From the IMG/VR virus record IMGVR_UViG_3300033995_001164, positions 245,178 through 309,177 of that record: a stretch of DNA of 64,000 bases, one strand, 5' to 3'. The translations under genes and the position numbers were made by a program. Shown here in pieces: positions 29,635 through 63,207 of this stretch (position 1 is the stretch's first letter; the number at the start of each line of letters is the position of its first letter). The notes under the pieces were generated by a model. The model worked only from the letters and a program-made list of their open reading frames with translations, had not been told where the DNA came from and ran no database searches.

Positions 29635-29852
29635 AATTTGTATTGTTCCTCCACCAGACTTTTTTTTCCGAAATAAATCAATGTGGGTTGTTGTCACCTC
29701 CAATTTGTAATGTTCCTCCACCTTTTTCCTTTTTCGATGTAACGCAAAAGCGTTGTTGTCACCTCCAATTTGTAATGTTCCTCCACCAATAAACACGGCT
29801 CAAATATTCATCAATAGTTGTTGTCACCTCCAATTTGTAATGTTCCTCCACC
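29635..29852 (-). CRISPR. CRISPR-like array beginning inside the 3' end of gene 29759-30106
   Basis: Three identical 36-bp repeats GTTGTTGTCACCTCCAATTTGTAATGTTCCTCCACC (29687-29722, 29752-29787, 29817-29852) plus a partial copy at 29635-29655; unique spacers of 31, 29 and 29 nt. Confidence 0.85.
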
Positions 29853-32392: not shown

Positions 32393-33421
32393 TCAATCAA
32401 CATTATTTTTTAAATATTTTTCAACAAATTTTTCTTCATATCTTTTTGTAAAAATAATTTGTTTTGTTTCATACAATTCTTTTAATTTTTTAGACGATAA
32501 ATTAGGTGTATCTCTTAATTTGTATGTAAGATTATTTTCATCACAAAATTTAATTGCCGATATTTTTTTTCTAACCACCGAATCACTATACCAAAGTTTT
32601 TTTGGCTTAATTTCTATTAAATATTTGTTTTTTAATATAAAATCAGCGGTATAAGTTCTGTTATTACCTTTATAATCAGTATAATTTATCTGATACATAT
32701 TAGATTCTGCATTAATCCACTCAATGTTATTTTTTTCAATAACATTAATCATGTATGATAATTCTTTAATACTTCTAAAAAACCAATTATTATACCATCC
32801 TGACCAACCATTACCGGAACCAACAGGACTTGGTTTTCCAAACATTGGGTTATTCTCTCCCGAACTATTTTTAGATTGTTTTATTTTTAATTGTTCTAAT
32901 TTAACATTAGCAATTTCGGTTCCATATTTTTCAACCCAAACATCATAGACAGATTTTCCAAACATAGGGTTATTCTCTCCTGAAGTATTTTTAGATTGTT
33001 TTATTTTTAATTTTTTCATTTTTTCTTCCGCAACTTCAACTCCATATTTATCAACCCAATAATAATAATAAGTAGAGTCCCCAAACATAGTGACATTACT
33101 TAATGATAAAATTCTCATTTTTTCCCTAAATTCTTCTGTTTTATATACTGAAAAATCTTTTTTTTCTCTCATTTTTTGTTTGGTGTCTTCAGTATGTTTT
33201 TTATTAAAAAATGGATTTAACTCACCAAATTTTCCAAACATAGGGTTATTGTCGCCAAGAACTCGTTGTTTCATACGTTCTCTCCTATCTTCGGTTATAG
33301 TTAATTTTAACCCACAACTTTTACAATTACTATTTTTGTTATCCGCTTTTATCATATTGTATTTGTTAGTGTAACTTATTGTTACACCACAAATAGGGCA
33401 TTTTCTTGTGAGATTTGACAT
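32393..33421 (-). CDS. homing endonuclease: zinc finger, NUMOD3 repeats and TnsA-like PD-(D/E)xK nuclease
   Basis: CPICG..CKSC; GENNPMFGK repeats; FRSIKEL, YTADF, IEIKP. Confidence 0.8.
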   Translation of the reverse strand: MSNLTRKCPICGVTISYTNKYNMIKADNKNSNCKSCGLKLTITEDRRERMKQRVLGDNNPMFGKFGELNPFFNKKHTEDTKQKMREKKDFSVYKTEEFREKMRILSLSNVTMFGDSTYYYYWVDKYGVEVAEEKMKKLKIKQSKNTSGENNPMFGKSVYDVWVEKYGTEIANVKLEQLKIKQSKNSSGENNPMFGKPSPVGSGNGWSGWYNNWFFRSIKELSYMINVIEKNNIEWINAESNMYQINYTDYKGNNRTYTADFILKNKYLIEIKPKKLWYSDSVVRKKISAIKFCDENNLTYKLRDTPNLSSKKLKELYETKQIIFTKRYEEKFVEKYLKNNVD

Positions 33422-46177: not shown

Positions 46178-46240
46178 GGGTTGGGATTCCATCGAACGAA
46201 GTGAGTGACCGGACGAAGTGAGTGACCGGACGAAGTGAGA
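46178..46240 (-). repeat. dispersed intergenic element, copy 1 of 5, with an internal 17-bp tandem repeat
   Basis: GGGATTCCATCGAACGAAGTGAG core; other copies at 48545-48585, 49996-50030, 50579-50620, 51362-51402. Confidence 0.9.
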
Positions 46241-46648
46241 CTACTCCCGCCCCCACCCATAATGAACCACCTCCCCATCAATATATTCCTTCCAAGTTTT
46301 ATTCCATGGACCGGAAAACAATACGGTCATACATCCGTTACTATTAGAAATCCGGTGATATGAATCCCGGGGAAAATAAACCAAGACTTTCTCCCTACGA
46401 ACAATACGATATTCTCCACTAACCTCATCATCCAAGATTTGTTCATCATACTCACCAAACAGTTTCACAGACCACGCATTAAAAGCGTGGGTATGAAACC
46501 GGTCCTGACTACCAAGAGATTTATGAAAATAAAAAAAGATGATGGAGAATAACCACTTACACTCAAAGACCACGAATTGACTAACGACCTGTTCCCCGAA
46601 CTCGAACTTATTGTATTTTAGAAATGAAATTGTTTTTGTTTTTACCAT
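46241..46648 (-). CDS. cupin-like protein
   Basis: RFHTHAFNAWS..GEYDE..YHRI. Confidence 0.6.
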   Translation of the reverse strand: MVKTKTISFLKYNKFEFGEQVVSQFVVFECKWLFSIIFFYFHKSLGSQDRFHTHAFNAWSVKLFGEYDEQILDDEVSGEYRIVRREKVLVYFPRDSYHRISNSNGCMTVLFSGPWNKTWKEYIDGEVVHYGWGRE

Positions 46649-46773
46649 AATGAATATACCTTATGGAATAAAAGTATAATTCTAATTTATGGTTATGTCA
46701 AATAAAAAACCCCAAATCTAATTAAAGAAATGGGGTATGTTTAAAAACATATTGGTAACATTTTTTTTTTGTG

Positions 46774-47058
46774 TTTAAATTGTAATGATTCCCAACTTGC
46801 TCCCCTGTTAGAGTTAAAATGTTATGTTGTGACTATCTTTCAAATTGTGATGATTCCCAACTTTGAATTTCGTTGAGGCTAACTTACAGCGGTTGCGACT
46901 ACCTTTCAAATTGTGATGATTCCCAACTCAAAATGTTATTCAATTGGGGATTTTATGTTGTAACTACCTTTCAAATTGTGATGATTCCCAACCCTATTAA
47001 CGAGGTTTATATCGGTGTCCTCGTTGTGACTACCTTTAAAATCGAGACACATCCCAAT
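46774..47058 (-). CRISPR. CRISPR array associated with the TnpB/Cas12-like gene
   Basis: Consensus (+) GTTGTGACTACCTTTCAAATTGTGATGATTCCCAAC at 46826-46861, 46892-46927, 46957-46992; half-degenerate copies at 47023-47058 and 46774-46796; spacers 29, 30, 29 and 30 nt. Confidence 0.92.
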
Positions 47059-47255
47059 AATGGCTTTTCAAATGAAATTGTGATAGTCTATCCGTTCTCG
47101 GATAATGAGGTTTTGAGACCCCTAGCCGCCTAACCGTTCCGGCAATCACACGTTGACCGTGTTCTTTTACCCGGGTTATATCTGCATACAGTGTTTTAAC
47201 CTTTTAACGTGTTACACACACGCGAGTTACCAATATGTTTAAGAACTTTTTTATT
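47059..47255 (-). ncRNA. putative omegaRNA/tracrRNA-like scaffold
   Basis: Non-coding and GC-richer; hairpin 47089-47104; 47141-47150 reads UGUGAUUGCC on minus and can pair with repeat GGUAGUCACA. Confidence 0.7.
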
Positions 47256-47261
47256 ATGATA

Positions 47262-47269
47262 CAAAGATA
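47262..47269 (-). promoter_or_regulatory. TATCTTTG box driving the scaffold and array
   Basis: 5 nt after the nuclease stop codon, pointing into the non-coding region. Confidence 0.7.
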
Positions 47270-47274
47270 AGTAA

Positions 47275-48477
47275 TTATTCTCTAACTAACAAACTTTCTC
47301 TGATATTTTTTGCTGCGTTTATATCTCTATCGTGGTGTTCCTCACAAGACTTACAGGTCCATTCCCTTTGGGATAACTTTAACTCAGTATTTATATCCCC
47401 ACAGTTAGAACAAGTCTTACTTGTATTACGGGGGTCAATCCTATTAAATTCAATTCCTTTTGAATTACAAACACTTCCCAAATAATCGACAAATGAACGA
47501 ATCCCGATTCTTGCAGTGGATTTAGCCATATGTTTATTCTGTAACATAAATGACAAACGAATATCCTCAACTTGTATTTTAGAAAACTTACCTTTAGTTA
47601 AAACACCAACAACATATCTGTGATATTCTTTTCTAATATTATTTAATTCATTCTGTAATCTACCCTTCTTCTCAATTACTCTCCAATAATTTTTGGATTT
47701 AGGTTTACCCTTGTTTAATCTGTTCTTACGAGATATACTCTTTTGAATAATTGAAATCTTATCTTCCAATTTTTTAATCCTCTCAATTGGTACCTGATAT
47801 TTAAGTCCTTCGGATGTAATTGCCATATCTTTAATACCTACATCAATTCCCAATGATTTACCCGAACTATTAATCTTAACAATTTCAGTATCCTTTAAAT
47901 CCAATGTTAAAGATAAATACCAATTACCATCAGACTTCCTATGGATTGACATTAACTTTGGTGTAGACCCTTTGAATTGTTTATGAAACTTACATTTTAT
48001 AATTGGATTTATCCCAACTTTTTTAAGTAAAGTAGGAGCAAACCTAATTTCATTATTATCCCAATCCAAACTTAAACTTCCACGACTAATACTATTTGAA
48101 TTAGTCGTTAATTTCAATATATTCGTTTTTTTCTTATACGAAGGTTTTCTTGATTTTGGTTTTTTTCTGAAATTTTTAATTGATGTGACCAAAGATTCAG
48201 AAACATATTCCCTAAATATTGATGGAACATTATCAAACCAATTAATCGTTGAAAGATAATTAGAGAAAAGAGATTTACTCTTTAAGTTCGGAGCAGGAAA
48301 GTCCTTAAAATCTTTCCCATCAATAAATTCACTAACCAAAAGATTATATCCCCCTCTTAATTTATTACCAATATCAAATAACCATCTCTTTTGTTTATCA
48401 TCCGGGTATATCCTATACTCAACTGATACTCCAACATAAGATGGACCCTTTTTTCTTTCAACCAAAAAATGATTCAT
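47275..48477 (-). CDS. tnpB: TnpB/Cas12f-like RNA-guided nuclease, 400 aa
   Basis: YRIYP N-terminus, RuvC-I GIDVG, RuvC-II VED, zinc finger CSNC/CKSC, RuvC-III DRDINAAKNI; start 48477 follows TATATTTG at 48497-48504. Confidence 0.93.
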   Translation of the reverse strand: MNHFLVERKKGPSYVGVSVEYRIYPDDKQKRWLFDIGNKLRGGYNLLVSEFIDGKDFKDFPAPNLKSKSLFSNYLSTINWFDNVPSIFREYVSESLVTSIKNFRKKPKSRKPSYKKKTNILKLTTNSNSISRGSLSLDWDNNEIRFAPTLLKKVGINPIIKCKFHKQFKGSTPKLMSIHRKSDGNWYLSLTLDLKDTEIVKINSSGKSLGIDVGIKDMAITSEGLKYQVPIERIKKLEDKISIIQKSISRKNRLNKGKPKSKNYWRVIEKKGRLQNELNNIRKEYHRYVVGVLTKGKFSKIQVEDIRLSFMLQNKHMAKSTARIGIRSFVDYLGSVCNSKGIEFNRIDPRNTSKTCSNCGDINTELKLSQREWTCKSCEEHHDRDINAAKNIRESLLVRE

Positions 48478-48598
48478 ATATAATTTATTTAGAAAGCAAA
48501 TATAAAACAAAGAATTCAAATCACCAAATATATAATGAAAAAAAGGAATGGGATTCCCTCGAACGAAGTGAGAAACCGGACGAAGAGCACTATACGAA

Positions 48599-49929
48599 TT
48601 ACTCATCAGCAGGGATATTATTTAACCAATTATTAAAATATTGTGAAGTATCCACATGATTTAATCCAAATAGTTTTCTTATACTATTGTATAACTCAGA
48701 CTTCATAGATATTTTACTAACACTATGTGGTCTCGAACCAACCTTAACTCCATTCACAATATAATAATAACTAAACATCTTAAACGCCCTCTCAAAATGG
48801 TTACTCTCTTTCGATACCGATAAGGTGGGGTTATCACCAACAATAGAATTAAGATATTCATGAACCAATTTTTCCATTATGTTGTTTCATTAATATCGGA
48901 CATCACATAACCTTCAGGTGGAAAATGAACCAAACATCTTCCACTCTCTTTATAACAAGTACAATCCAATTCATCATCAATCTCAAATGAAGCACTGCTC
49001 ACCTTATCTTCGTAATTTGTGAAGAAATCATTAAAGATTCCCGTAATGGTCATTTTCTTTTTCACCTTACTTATTTTTTGAATAGTGAAACCCTTTGAGG
49101 GTCTATTGTTATCACAATGTTATTACTTGAATCCGCATACGAAGCAATGTCATCATCCAATAACATTTTATGGATATTATCATCATAATAAATCACCACA
49201 TCATTGTATGAGTAATGTGGGTAATGATTTTTGATTGGTTCCAATAGAACAACATCAGTACATTGACTAATGGCACCGTCCATAATGGATTTAATTAGTT
49301 CATAATAATATTGATTTCGGTTTTTCTTATACTCGTTCAATATATCAATTCGAGATAAGGGTTCAGTTGTTTTTGGTTTGGAGTTCCACATCATTTTTTA
49401 CTATTTCTATTAATTTTTTAAGACATTACATATTAAAGCTAACAATGGTAATGATAAGAGTAATAATGAAATTACTAACCCCCAATAATCTTTTATTTTT
49501 TGCATATTTCTATTAATTTTTTAAGTTTTGCTTCTTAACAATTTCTATCAACTTGACCAAACATTCAAGTTCTGCTTCTTCGTAAGTTTGAAAAAAAGTA
49601 TCCCATATTAATCCGCCTATTCTAAAATCACTATTATATTCAGTGATATTATCTTGGATATACCAACAATAAGGTTGTTGATATTTGTTTTCTTTAGTAA
49701 TCCAACTATCTAAATTATACTTCTCTCTAAACCATCTAAATGCTTGTTGGTAAAGTGGTGCTACAAATGTTGTTTTAGATTCTAATCTAAATTGAAAAGG
49801 AGCAGATATAGTTTCATTTGATATATAAACCTCTCTATCTTTACCTACATAATATCCTAAACAAGGTTCATCAAATCCTAATTCTTTTAAAGCTAATGCT
49901 TGTTCGTAAGGTATAAATTCTTTTTCCAT
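48599..49929 (-). CDS. four hypothetical proteins (48599-48877, 48877-49065, 49071-49394, 49513-49929)
   Basis: ORF track; 49513 has LKELGFDEPC..APLYQQAFRWFREKY..YEEAE. Confidence 0.6.
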
Positions 49930-60092: not shown

Positions 60093-60641
60093 ATGACAGA
60101 TAAACTAAAGCATAGAATCATTAACTACCTAAATAAAGAATATTCCGGGATTGTTGATTATGAAACGGATGATTGGAAAGAGCATATATTCTTTATGAAA
60201 GACGGGAAAGTTCTTAATTATTACAGTAAAATAAATGGGGTTGTTTATATCTCTTATTCTAAAATTTGGTCATTATTAGAAACCTTTTTTGGATTAAATT
60301 ATCAGGAAGTACAAGACCTAACAAAAATATGGGTGGAGGGGCATCACAGATTTAAGGTAACAACAACGGTCGAAGAAAGAGGAGAATTGATTGACTTGGT
60401 GGAGGAACATCACAGATTAAACGTAACAACAATCGTGCCGAATTGCTTTGTTCACTGGGACAAGGTGGAGGAACATCACAGATTAAACGTAACAACAACA
60501 AGACATGACCGTTATGGAAATGTTACACCGGAGGAACTTCACAAATTAAAGTCAACAACAACCTTCGGTTGTTTTATCGTTGATTTACCTTTGGTAGAAA
60601 ACCATTACAAATTAAACTACCCCGCTAACGGTGAAATATGA
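60093..60641 (+). CDS. 29759-family protein with a translated repeat-spacer tail
   Basis: Units VEEHHRLNVTTT plus 9-10 variable residues. Confidence 0.8.
   Translation: MTDKLKHRIINYLNKEYSGIVDYETDDWKEHIFFMKDGKVLNYYSKINGVVYISYSKIWSLLETFFGLNYQEVQDLTKIWVEGHHRFKVTTTVEERGELIDLVEEHHRLNVTTIVPNCFVHWDKVEEHHRLNVTTTRHDRYGNVTPEELHKLKSTTTFGCFIVDLPLVENHYKLNYPANGEI
60332..60617 (+). CRISPR. in-frame CRISPR-like array
   Basis: 36-bp repeats at 60332, 60398, 60464, 60527 and a partial at 60593; spacers 30, 30, 27 and 30 nt. Confidence 0.75.
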
Positions 60642-62696: not shown

Positions 62697-63207
62697 ATTT
62701 AAAAGAACAATTTTTGATAAATTAACCGATGACCTATCTCATGTGGAATTGATTTTCTACAATGACTCCCTTTGGTTTATTAACCGAGAAAAGAAGTATT
62801 GGTATTTGGAATTAGAAAAATCAGGTAAATTATATTGGAGATGGCAATTCTTTACTAATTTTTTCTCTCCATTCACAATGGAACGAAATGAATATGAACC
62901 ACTTATAAAAGAATGGGTAGAGTCAGCATTAAATTGCGGGGTTACAACAACAGTAAACAAGGATTCAATCGCCGGATGGACGGTAGAGTCAGCATTAAAT
63001 TGCGGGGTCACAACAACTCAAATAGGCACCATCAAAAAACTGAAATGGGTAGAGTCAGCATTAAATTGTGGGGTGACAACAACGTTGTTGATGAAATTCC
63101 ACCAAAAACTATTGGTAGAGTCAGCATTAAATTGTGGGGTGACAACAACAGTACCATCTAAGTTATCCGTTGCAATAAAGGTGGAGTCAGTATTAAATGG
63201 ATTATAA
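62683..63207 (+). CDS. protein with a translated repeat-spacer tail
   Basis: Four units of VESALNCGVTTT plus 10 variable residues. Confidence 0.85.
   Translation: MITDKFKRTIFDKLTDDLSHVELIFYNDSLWFINREKKYWYLELEKSGKLYWRWQFFTNFFSPFTMERNEYEPLIKEWVESALNCGVTTTVNKDSIAGWTVESALNCGVTTTQIGTIKKLKWVESALNCGVTTTLLMKFHQKLLVESALNCGVTTTVPSKLSVAIKVESVLNGL
62916..63200 (+). CRISPR. in-frame CRISPR-like array
   Basis: GGTAGAGTCAGCATTAAATTGYGGGGTBACAACAAC at 62916, 62982, 63048, 63114 and a partial at 63180; four unique 30-nt spacers. Confidence 0.85.

What the first reader, a model, noticed from the sequence alone, without database searches (positions are those of the whole stretch)
46826..46992. Array repeat looks borrowed from a Bacteroidota type VI-B (Cas13b) system
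The minus-sense repeat has GTTG...CAAC ends, 36-nt length and ~30-nt spacers. From memory it is close to Cas13b direct repeats such as Riemerella GTTGGGACTGCTCTCACTTTGAAGGGTATTCACAAC (29/36 identical if my recall is right). Inference: the nuclease captured a host-type array, so host Cas1-Cas2 can update it. The transcripts, including those of the gene-embedded arrays, might also load or decoy host Cas13b/Cas9.
Basis: partly seen in the sequence, partly recalled or inferred. Interest (0 to 1): 0.65.

Follow-up and report, generated by a model that had tools for sequence, protein, structure and literature searches.

The report
Phage TnpB nuclease array with Cas13b-type repeats
A 309-kb lake phage carries a small CRISPR array whose repeats are of the kind used by the Cas13b systems of Bacteroidota, yet the array is wired to the phage's own TnpB-family DNA nuclease, which suggests that a virus shares CRISPR parts with its host.

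Summary
Window 46761-47058 (minus sense) is a five-unit array. It has three intact 36-nt GTTG...CAAC repeats, two degenerate end units and four spacers of 29-30 nt.

Tested against real data, the repeat belongs to the type VI-B family. It is 32/36 identical to repeats beside confirmed cas13b genes in Chryseobacterium and 33/36 to one copy in a metagenomic array. It is closer to these than to the repeats of sister phages (21-29/36).

The array is not free-standing. Directly upstream lies a TnpB-family RuvC nuclease (about 400 aa, catalytic motifs intact), then a scaffold of about 190 nt. The scaffold tail is an anti-repeat to repeat positions 25-31. This module recurs in relatives down to 40% protein identity, and the anti-repeat covaries with the repeat. 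Two lake metatranscriptomes hold whole contigs of 151 and 170 nt that match only the scaffold.

The phage has no cas1, cas2 or cas13b. The nearest host genome has a II-C Cas9-Cas1-Cas2 locus whose repeat has the same ends and 30-nt spacers.

Best reading: a phage-borne TranC / type V-U-like system that adopted host VI-B repeats. Updating by host Cas1-Cas2 and loading or decoying of Cas13b remain plausible but unshown. The spacers' targets are unknown.

The parts
46826..46992 (-). The stretch in the finding: three intact 36-nt repeats (46957-46992, 46892-46927, 46826-46861) and two spacers (46928-46956, 46862-46891)
   Evidence: 3 matches within 1 mismatch of the consensus, 0 in shuffles. The three copies differ only at minus-sense positions 26, 31 and 32. 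The changes at positions 26 and 31 still pair with the scaffold anti-repeat (as G.U or A-U, and G-C or G.U). Position 32 lies outside that duplex.
46761..47058 (-). The full array: unit R0 at 47023-47058 (5' half degenerate, 3' half intact), three intact repeats, terminal unit at 46761-46796 (3' half decayed into poly-A); spacers 46993-47022, 46928-46956, 46862-46891, 46797-46825
   Evidence: The array is the same in three further IMG/VR records of this phage.
47059..47240 (-). Scaffold RNA (omega-RNA / tracrRNA-like) between the nuclease gene and the array, with conserved hairpins
   Evidence: The consensus fold of 8 lineages has 22 of 42 pairs with compensatory changes. Whole contigs from two metatranscriptome libraries cover only 47072-47222 and 47063-47232. 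Their two changes at paired positions turn U.G into C-G in the minus sense. No Rfam family matches.
47082..47088 (-). Anti-repeat GACUAUC, directly after the hairpin with the GAGAAC loop (47091-47102); it pairs with repeat positions 25-31 (GGUAGUC or GAUAGUC)
   Evidence: Helix at columns 211-217:281-287 of alignment A1 has no broken pair apart from two gaps, and two pairs are fully compensatory (AU/GC and CG/UA). Duplex energies are -9.7 to -14.5 kcal/mol for each tail with its own repeat (-7.4 to -16.2 within a class) and -3.8 to -8.8 across the two main classes.
47262..47269 (-). TATCTTTG, a match to the Bacteroidota -7 promoter box TAnnTTTG, 6-13 nt downstream of the nuclease stop codon (47275-47277)
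   Evidence: Present at the same place in all relatives read (alignment). The promoter consensus is from my own knowledge of Bacteroidota promoters. Function not tested.
47226..47240 (-). 5' arm of a long-range closing helix (AAACAUAUUGGUAAC) that brackets scaffold plus array
   Evidence: Perfect 15-bp complement of 46745-46759. In other lineages both arms change together.
46745..46759 (-). 3' arm of the closing helix (GUUACCAAUAUGUUU), just after the poly-A that ends the array
   Evidence: duplex -19.6 to -27.5 kcal/mol in 6 lineages
46700..46736 (-). Terminator-like hairpin (CCCCA...UGGGG) followed by a U tract, closing the minus-strand unit
   Evidence: Read from the sequence. Relatives have clean GC hairpins plus a T run at the same place. 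The consensus scanner missed it because the loop is long.
47275..48477 (-). TnpB-family RuvC nuclease, about 400 aa if it starts at M44 like all called relatives (the open frame runs up to 48606)
   Evidence: NF040570 guided_TnpB 3.6e-54; phrog_506. PDB matches: 8iaz 4e-29, ISDra2 TnpB 8h1j/8exa 1.6e-20, LaTranC 9jfo 3.7e-19. The GIDVG / VED / DRD motifs and the CxxC...CxxC zinc finger are present. Single copy in the phage.

Best explanation
The repeats are the CRISPR array of a compact, phage-borne system built around a TnpB-family DNA nuclease, of the kind called TranC or type V-U.

Inferred mechanism: a promoter at the end of the nuclease gene drives one minus-strand transcript made of scaffold, array and terminator. 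The scaffold of about 170-190 nt ends in an anti-repeat that pairs with the 3' half of each repeat. The 29-30-nt spacer downstream of that repeat is thereby presented as the guide for RuvC cleavage of matching DNA, probably next to a T-rich motif.

The repeat sequence itself is of the Bacteroidota type VI-B (Cas13b) family. It most likely came from, or is kept in step with, the arrays of a Chryseobacterium-like host.

Shown: the array, the repeat family, the conserved synteny, the covariation between anti-repeat and repeat, and the presence of scaffold-only contigs in RNA libraries.

Inferred: the direction of transfer, the guide architecture, DNA targeting, and any use of host Cas1-Cas2 or Cas13b.
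For: 1. Nuclease. The adjacent ORF is a TnpB-family protein with an intact RuvC triad.

2. Synteny. Relatives at 86% down to 40% protein identity were read in lineages L010, L013, L015, L021, L149, L151 and L152. All have gene, scaffold of about 200 nt, then 36-nt repeats with spacers of about 30 nt that differ between lineages. Where the contig reaches the end of the array there are 3-6 repeat units, then poly-A, the closing-helix arm and a terminator.

3. Anti-repeat. The consensus fold puts a 7-bp helix between the scaffold tail and repeat positions 25-31. It has no broken pair, and two pairs are fully compensatory. Own-class duplexes are much stronger than cross-class ones.

4. Pattern of decay. 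The first unit keeps only its 3' half and the last unit keeps only its 5' half. This fits guides made of repeat 3' half plus downstream spacer.

5. Expression. Two independent metatranscriptome libraries contain whole contigs of 151 and 170 nt that cover only the scaffold, not the gene or the array. The two changes at paired positions improve U.G to C-G in the minus sense.

6. Repeat family. The repeat is 32/36 identical to Cas13b-adjacent repeats of Chryseobacterium and 33/36 to a metagenomic copy. It is closer to these than to sister phage repeats. The L149 repeat is likewise 32/36 to the repeat of a Dysgonomonas array that lies on the same contig as the genome's stop-interrupted cas13b hit. 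The L152 repeat is 31/36 to a Tenacibaculum array, where the one large neighbouring ORF tested gave no Cas13b hit.

7. Candidate target. Low-depth contigs in the same lake samples match only spacer 46862-46891, with 1-2 mismatches and unrelated flanks. The 5' flank in guide sense is TTTTC or TTTTA.
Against: No cleavage, RNA-end or strand data exist. Contigs from RNA libraries cannot show strand or exact ends, and such libraries can contain DNA. Their ends may also be assembly breaks at the repeats and at the inverted repeat.

No protospacer was found in IMG/VR, INPHARED or the held JGI metagenome contigs.

Among the three intact repeats the 5' 25 nt are invariant. This is not what a constraint on the 3' half alone predicts, and it fits some extra constraint, such as host Cas13b or Cas1-Cas2 recognition.

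The repeats track host variants rather than the nuclease's own phylogeny. This argues that a host factor also matters.

The anti-repeat helix is only 7 bp in this phage (-9.8 kcal/mol).
Confidence: 0.6

Rival explanations
1. The array mainly serves the host's Cas13b. On this reading it is a phage mini-array that is processed and loaded by host Cas13b to cut the transcripts of rival phages, and the neighbouring TnpB locus is a separate or secondary matter.
For: The repeat is 32-33/36 identical to Chryseobacterium VI-B repeats over its whole length, including the 5' half that a type V-like guide would not need. The 5' 25 nt are invariant among the three copies. The repeats of different phage lineages match different host VI-B variants. 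The phage has no Cas13b of its own.
Against: The gene-scaffold-array synteny is conserved down to 40% protein identity, and the anti-repeat covaries with the repeat. The L010/L013/L015 repeats have drifted from the VI-B consensus (GATGTAACC in place of GGGTA...), with a compensating change in the scaffold. The last spacer is followed by a repeat that lacks its 3' half, which would spoil a Cas13b crRNA. From established knowledge of Cas13b processing, cutting at the repeat-spacer junction would separate each repeat from the downstream spacer.
Confidence: 0.15
2. The repeats act as an RNA decoy (an RNA anti-CRISPR). Repeat-bearing transcripts would soak up host Cas13b, or disturb Cas9/tracrRNA, and so blunt host immunity.
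For: The repeats are close to host VI-B repeats and share their ends with the host II-C repeat. RNA-based anti-CRISPRs made of repeat mimics are known in phages (my knowledge of Camara-Wilpert et al. 2023; not read here).
Against: Spacer length is held at 29-30 nt and spacer content differs between lineages, which a decoy does not need. The array is coupled to a nuclease and a scaffold. No tracrRNA-like anti-repeat for Cas9 was looked for or seen.
Confidence: 0.1
3. There was no borrowing. The repeats arose by duplication of the 3' end of the TnpB omega RNA, and they resemble VI-B repeats through old common ancestry or convergence.
For: In L010, L013 and L015 the scaffold itself ends in ...GTAACCACAAC (...ATAACTACAAC in L015) followed by a first guide, as in an omega RNA. 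Array birth by serial duplication of omega-RNA segments is one of the two routes proposed for Cas12 origins (PMC10691335). The 3' half (TTTGAAAGGTAGTTACAAC) is shared across most of the clade.
Against: The variable 5' half of this phage's repeat matches Chryseobacterium VI-B repeats at 13 of 16 free positions, but matches close sister phages at only 5 of 16. The same holds for L149 against its nearest bacterial repeat. This pattern needs exchange with, or tracking of, host arrays.
Confidence: 0.1

Closest known systems
TranC (transposon-CRISPR intermediates) and type V-U candidates, including the phage-encoded CauTranC9
   Same: A TnpB-sized RuvC nuclease with a short CRISPR array, and a guide RNA split into a scaffold (tracr part) and a repeat-spacer part. 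There is no adaptation genes beside it. Arrays have 3-20 repeats of 32-38 bp, and some systems sit in Caudoviricetes genomes (bioRxiv 10.64898/2026.03.27.714800; PMC13565253; PMC12669027). LaTranC is among the PDB matches.
   Different: Here the repeat belongs to the VI-B (Cas13b) family and follows host variants. The scaffold is fused directly to the first repeat unit, and a covarying long-range helix brackets scaffold and array. Membership of a named TranC clade was not tested.
Type VI-B CRISPR arrays of Bacteroidota (Cas13b), for example Chryseobacterium spp., Bergeyella zoohelcum, Flavobacterium columnare
   Same: A 36-nt repeat with GTTG...CAAC ends, a T-tract plus the G-R-R-GGTA core, and 30-nt spacers. 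Identity to Chryseobacterium copies is 32-33/36.
   Different: There is no cas13b in the 309-kb phage. The array sits behind a TnpB-family gene and its scaffold, and it has only four spacers with degenerate units at both ends.
IS200/IS605 TnpB with omega RNA (ISDra2 type)
   Same: The protein family and size, a scaffold RNA placed just after the gene, and a guide 3' of the scaffold.
   Different: It is single-copy. No neighbour in the relatives' contigs is listed with a transposase Pfam family. It carries several guides in an array instead of one guide set by a transposon end.
Cas12f (type V-F) with tracrRNA
   Same: A small RuvC effector, a tracrRNA anti-repeat pairing with the repeat, and repeats of 36-37 nt with GTTG...CAAC ends in some members (the last point from my memory of Un1Cas12f1, not tested).
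   Different: The match to the Cas12f models is weak (NF049972 7e-12 against a cut-off of 450 bits). The protein is closer to TnpB.
Trans use of II-C adaptation genes by VI-B arrays (Flavobacterium columnare; my knowledge of Hoikkala et al. 2021, not read here)
   Same: The nearest host genome has II-C Cas9-Cas1-Cas2. Its 47-nt repeat shares both ends with the VI-B repeat and with the phage repeat, and its spacers are 30 nt.
   Different: Whether such machinery writes into a phage array is untested.

Membership tests
Type VI-B (Cas13b) repeat family | 36-nt repeat with GTTG...CAAC ends and spacers of about 30 nt | tested here: met
Type VI-B (Cas13b) repeat family | The nearest repeats in genomes lie beside cas13b | tested here: met
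   The pattern scan returned Bacteroidota arrays. The top hit scores 32/36, several others 31/36 and the remaining Chryseobacterium hits 29-31/36. The neighbouring large ORFs in L093, L047, L144, L092, L086 and L046 hit NF038190 at 1e-139 to 1e-273. The scan pattern fixed 17 bases and limited 3 more to purines, so the informative figure is 13 of the 16 free positions.
Type VI-B CRISPR-Cas system | cas13b in the same genome or locus | tested here: not met
   No NF038190 match in the 309-kb phage record. The model does find Cas13b in four bacterial genomes.
Type VI-B CRISPR-Cas system | The repeat is bound and processed by Cas13b | not testable with these tools
   Needs biochemistry or small-RNA sequencing.
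TranC / type V-U (TnpB-derived CRISPR system) | TnpB/Cas12-family RuvC nuclease with intact catalytic residues | tested here: met
TranC / type V-U (TnpB-derived CRISPR system) | A co-oriented CRISPR array conserved next to the nuclease across relatives | tested here: met
   8 lineages, 40-100% protein identity
TranC / type V-U (TnpB-derived CRISPR system) | A scaffold or tracr RNA whose anti-repeat pairs with the repeat | tested here: met
   Covarying 7-bp helix and the duplex energy matrix. This is in silico only.
TranC / type V-U (TnpB-derived CRISPR system) | The scaffold RNA is expressed | tested here: inconclusive
   Scaffold-only contigs occur in two RNA libraries. Strand, ends and DNA carry-over cannot be judged from contigs.
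TranC / type V-U (TnpB-derived CRISPR system) | RNA-guided DNA cleavage next to a TAM/PAM | not testable with these tools
   There is only a lead: a TTTTC/TTTTA 5' flank on candidate protospacer contigs.
Mobile IS200/IS605 element | TnpA or transposon ends, several copies, a single guide | tested here: not met
   One copy in the phage. No transposase Pfam family is listed for the neighbours in the relatives' contigs. An array replaces the single guide. Transposon ends were not searched for directly.
Solitary phage mini-array / RNA anti-CRISPR | Host-like repeats with no cognate effector in the phage | tested here: inconclusive
   The repeats are host-like and the phage has no Cas13b. But a different effector (TnpB family) with a matching anti-repeat is adjacent.

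The most novel reading that the evidence does not exclude
The phage nuclease's anti-repeat is tuned to the host's VI-B repeat. It pairs as well with the repeat of Chryseobacterium sp. IT-36CA2 as with its own (-9.7 against -9.8 kcal/mol). The phage TnpB-family enzyme could therefore load guides from the host's own Cas13b array transcripts. It would then turn the host's RNA-targeting immune memory into DNA cleavage of rival phages. In the other direction, the host's II-C Cas1-Cas2 could write new spacers into the phage array. That would be two-way sharing of CRISPR parts between a virus and its host, across CRISPR types V, VI and II.
Probability: 0.15. Interest if true: 0.85.

Novelty: new variant of a known kind. 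Interest (0 to 1): 0.66.

Why it matters
About 50 independent unions of TnpB with CRISPR arrays have been inferred. Capture of a pre-existing array is one of the two proposed routes from TnpB to Cas12 (PMC12669027, PMC10691335). This locus looks like that route caught in the act, in a phage: a TnpB-sized nuclease whose scaffold has evolved an anti-repeat to a repeat family belonging to a different CRISPR type, the RNA-targeting VI-B.

Because the repeats follow host variants more closely than they follow the nuclease's phylogeny, the locus makes several questions directly testable:
- Do arrays move between host and virus?
- Can a DNA nuclease and an RNA nuclease draw on one repeat type?
- Can host adaptation genes feed a viral array?

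It also offers a 400-aa nuclease with a defined natural guide scaffold.

Tried and rejected
1. Protospacers. Exact cores of all four spacers were scanned in IMG/VR. They found only the array itself in three other IMG/VR records of this phage. One spacer was scanned in the JGI metagenome contigs, with no hit. The whole locus was searched against INPHARED phages and gave only chance hits. The candidate protospacer flank and half-spacer were scanned in IMG/VR and INPHARED. The ten flank hits lack the protospacer, and nothing else was found.

2. Self-targets. No spacer of any lineage matches the phage genome or any held locus within 5 mismatches, apart from the arrays themselves.

3. Host link through host spacers. 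None of 745 spacers from the 120 bacterial arrays matches the phage beyond 17 nt.

4. A closer host repeat. None within 3 mismatches in 401 genomes of the family of the best hit.

5. Rfam. No family matches the scaffold.

6. The sigma-70 promoter and terminator scanner gave nothing useful for this AT-rich Bacteroidota-type phage.

7. An anti-repeat elsewhere in the scaffold (the GTGTGATTGCCGGAAC region) was rejected. That region is conserved in lineages whose repeats differ.

8. Chance resemblance was rejected on the free-position counts.

9. Literature. The TranC paper itself and the type V variants paper (PMC12171694) are not held. I therefore could not check whether this clade, or its repeat type, has already been described.

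10. Not used: structure prediction and complex prediction were not needed for the question.

Full report
**What is in the sequence.** The window is the last 64 kb of a 309,177-bp IMG/VR virus record (about 30% G+C, rated complete by CheckV). At 46826-46992 there are three 36-nt repeats, each within one mismatch of their consensus. No shuffle of the window gives a match. The array is larger than the finding says. A unit with a degenerate 5' half lies at 47023-47058, and a unit whose 3' half decays into poly-A lies at 46761-46796. This gives four spacers of 29-30 nt. In the minus sense the repeat reads GTTGGGAATCATCACAATTTGAAAGGTAGTCACAAC. The whole phage has only four such arrays, all inside this window. 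It has no cas1, cas2 or cas13b.

**Is the repeat of the Cas13b kind?** I tested this on genomes rather than from memory. I made a pattern from the repeat's ends and core: GTTG, 13 free bases, TTTG, three purines, GGTA, three free bases, ACAAC. Nearly all are Bacteroidota, and they include the reference Cas13b strains Bergeyella zoohelcum ATCC 43767, Segatella buccae ATCC 33574 and Flavobacterium columnare ATCC 23463.
- The closest repeats are from Chryseobacterium: sp. IT-36CA2 at 32/36; C. phosphatilyticum and C. ureilyticum at 31/36; spp. CH25 and KCF3-3 at 30/36.
- The large ORFs next to six tested arrays, including the two best with an adjacent large ORF, are Cas13b by the NCBIfam equivalog model (E 1e-139 to 1e-273).
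- A metagenomic array of the same type holds one copy at 33/36.
- The pattern fixes 17 bases outright and limits three more to purines, so the fair measure is the 16 free positions. The best hit shares 13 of them, whereas most bacterial repeats share 2-7.
- No closer copy (3 or fewer mismatches) exists in 401 sampled genomes of that family.

The observation and the label 'VI-B type' therefore stand.

**The array has an owner in the phage.** Directly upstream on the same strand is a TnpB-family gene (NF040570, 3.6e-54). Its best solved relatives are TnpB proteins and LaTranC. It has the GIDVG, VED and DRD RuvC motifs and a CxxC...CxxC zinc finger. Relatives are all called at about 400 aa, so the gene probably starts at M44 (47275-48477). 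I read the loci of relatives at 86% down to 40% protein identity, taken from many metagenomes. Every one has the same layout:
- the gene;
- a conserved non-coding stretch of about 200 nt;
- 36-nt repeats with spacers of about 30 nt that differ between lineages;
- where the contig reaches the end of the array: 3-6 repeat units, then poly-A, a short conserved motif and a terminator hairpin.

This is not a chance neighbour or a passing insertion element. The gene is single-copy in the phage, and no transposase Pfam family is listed for the neighbours in the relatives' contigs.

**How scaffold and repeat fit together.** A consensus fold of eight lineages finds several hairpins with compensatory changes; 22 of 42 pairs show them. 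Straight after a hairpin with an invariant GAGAAC loop it finds a 7-bp helix between the scaffold tail and repeat positions 25-31. In this phage the tail is GACUAUC and the repeat is GGUAGUC or GAUAGUC. In the L010/L013/L015 lineages (about 83% protein identity) the tail is GGUUAUC and the repeat is GUAACC. Two pairs have thus changed on both sides, and no pair is broken. Each tail pairs with its own repeat at -9.7 to -14.5 kcal/mol. Pairs within a class give -7.4 to -16.2, and pairs across the two main classes give -3.8 to -8.8. The differences among this phage's own three repeats at positions 26 and 31 also keep this pairing; position 32 lies outside the duplex. The first unit keeps only its 3' half and the last only its 5' half. 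That is what guides made of repeat 3' half plus downstream spacer would allow. Beginning 6 nt after the stop codon, all relatives have TAnnTTTG, which matches the Bacteroidota -7 promoter box (a consensus I know from the literature, not tested here). A 15-17-bp helix, whose two arms change together between lineages, brackets scaffold and array.

**Expression and habitat.**
- The locus is present with all sampled 31-nt words in 18 lake-water metagenome runs from 2020-2024. This is a freshwater phage with a stable array.
- Two metatranscriptome libraries from other studies each contain one short contig (151 and 170 nt, the whole contig) that covers only 47072-47222 and 47063-47232. That is the scaffold, and neither the gene nor the array.
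- These contigs differ from the window at 4 and 8 places. The two changes at paired positions turn U.G into C-G in the minus sense; in the plus sense those pairs would be A.C mismatches in the window. The other seven changes lie in unpaired positions.
- This fits an abundant, structured minus-strand RNA. However, contigs cannot show strand or true ends, and RNA libraries can contain DNA.

**Targets.** No protospacer was found in the collections I could scan. In two of the lake DNA runs, extra low-depth contigs (160-674 nt) match only 46861-46892. That is spacer 46862-46891 plus one base on each side, with 1-2 mismatches and unrelated flanks. In guide sense their 5' flank is TTTTC or TTTTA, whereas the array has ACAAC at that place. 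This is a lead to a real target with a T-rich motif and no more than that. I could not retrieve the contigs or find them elsewhere.

**Was the repeat borrowed, and who else uses it?** This phage's repeat is closer to Chryseobacterium VI-B repeats (32-33/36) than to any sister phage repeat (21-29/36). Its closest protein relatives have the most different repeats (5 of 16 free positions). The L149 repeat is likewise 32/36 to a Dysgonomonas array, which lies on the same contig as that genome's stop-interrupted cas13b hit. The L152 repeat is 31/36 to a Tenacibaculum array, where the one large neighbouring ORF tested gave no Cas13b hit. Vertical descent of repeat with nuclease does not explain this. 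Exchange with host arrays, or tracking of them, does.

It also means that some host factor probably constrains the repeat. The nearest host genome has a II-C Cas9-Cas1-Cas2 locus with 47-nt repeats and 30-nt spacers. The phage repeat aligns to that repeat with 30 of 36 identical columns and an insertion of about 11 nt, and it shares both ends. Host Cas1-Cas2 could therefore plausibly recognise it. Related loci show turnover:
- identical proteins with different first spacers (L149 against L150);
- a scaffold-proximal unit present or absent (L021 against L028);
- an internal unit present or absent (L015 against L018).

In this phage, though, the array is frozen and its first unit is degenerate. 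Loading or decoying of Cas13b remains possible and untested. From what is known of Cas13b processing, cutting at the repeat-spacer junction would destroy guides of the type V kind, so the two uses would compete.

**Comparison with what is known.** TnpB-sized nucleases with short arrays and a split guide RNA are known as TranC or V-U candidates. About 50 independent unions of TnpB with arrays have been inferred. Capture of an existing array is one proposed route, and at least one such system is phage-encoded and targets phages. The kind is therefore known. What appears new is threefold:
- the repeat belongs to the family of a different CRISPR type, VI-B, and follows host variants;
- the nuclease's scaffold carries a covarying anti-repeat to it;
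- that anti-repeat pairs equally well with the host's own VI-B repeat.

I could not read the TranC paper or the recent type V survey, so prior description of this clade cannot be excluded.

**Verdict.** The best reading is a phage TranC-like system with host VI-B-type repeats (confidence about 0.6). I rate it a new variant of a known kind, with interest about 0.66.

Noticed in passing
window 29644-29852 (minus), 60327-60561 (plus), 62913-63149 (plus): The phage's three other arrays each begin inside the 3' end of a paralogous small gene (P0125, P0123, P0124). The last 12 codons (VEEHYKLEVTTT or similar) are the first 36-nt repeat. Further copies follow, separated by 27-30-nt spacers. In-frame copies read as repeated peptides and out-of-frame copies read as WWRNITN. 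The gene family is widespread in phage contigs (92 hits), and their variable tails show that the same thing happens elsewhere. The repeats are related to the VI-B type (22-27 identical columns).
   Followed up: partly
window 46745-46759 and 47226-47240; same places in L010, L013, L015, L021, L151: A perfect inverted repeat of 15-17 bp brackets the scaffold and the whole array, and both arms change together between lineages. It could be an RNase III processing stem or a way to hold the transcript ends together. Its function is unknown.
   Followed up: partly
window 48478-48606; G000 295112-295201 and 291318-291395: The 43-codon extension upstream of the likely nuclease start is about 60-67% similar, as translated, to two other places in the phage. 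It is probably a repeated intergenic or promoter element rather than coding sequence.
   Followed up: no
window 46196-46239: A perfect 17-nt tandem repeat (ACGAAGTGAGTGACCGG, 2.6 copies) sits just downstream of the cysteine-dioxygenase-like gene at 46241-46648.
   Followed up: no
window 32834-33059: A 120-nt tandem duplication (83% identical) lies inside the 342-aa ORF at 32393-33421.
   Followed up: no
L030 (Sphingobacterium alkalisoli), L057 (Dysgonomonas termitidis), L100: Some bacterial arrays of the VI-B repeat type lack a working partner. No Cas13b hit was found in the S. alkalisoli genome, and the D. termitidis cas13b hit is interrupted by stop codons. One VI-B-like repeat sits on a contig binned as Synechococcus, which is probably a binning error.
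   Followed up: no
L158 7634-8917 and L093 3334-4028 (Chryseobacterium sp. IT-36CA2): Within one host genome, the 47-nt II-C repeat and the 36-nt VI-B repeat are clearly homologous. They share both ends and differ by a block of about 11 nt in the middle (28 of 36 columns identical).
   Followed up: partly
window 47247-47279: In the lake DNA runs, short low-depth contigs match only this stretch of about 31 nt. It spans the promoter box and the stop codon, with unrelated flanks. This suggests a promoter element shared with other genomes in the lake.
   Followed up: no
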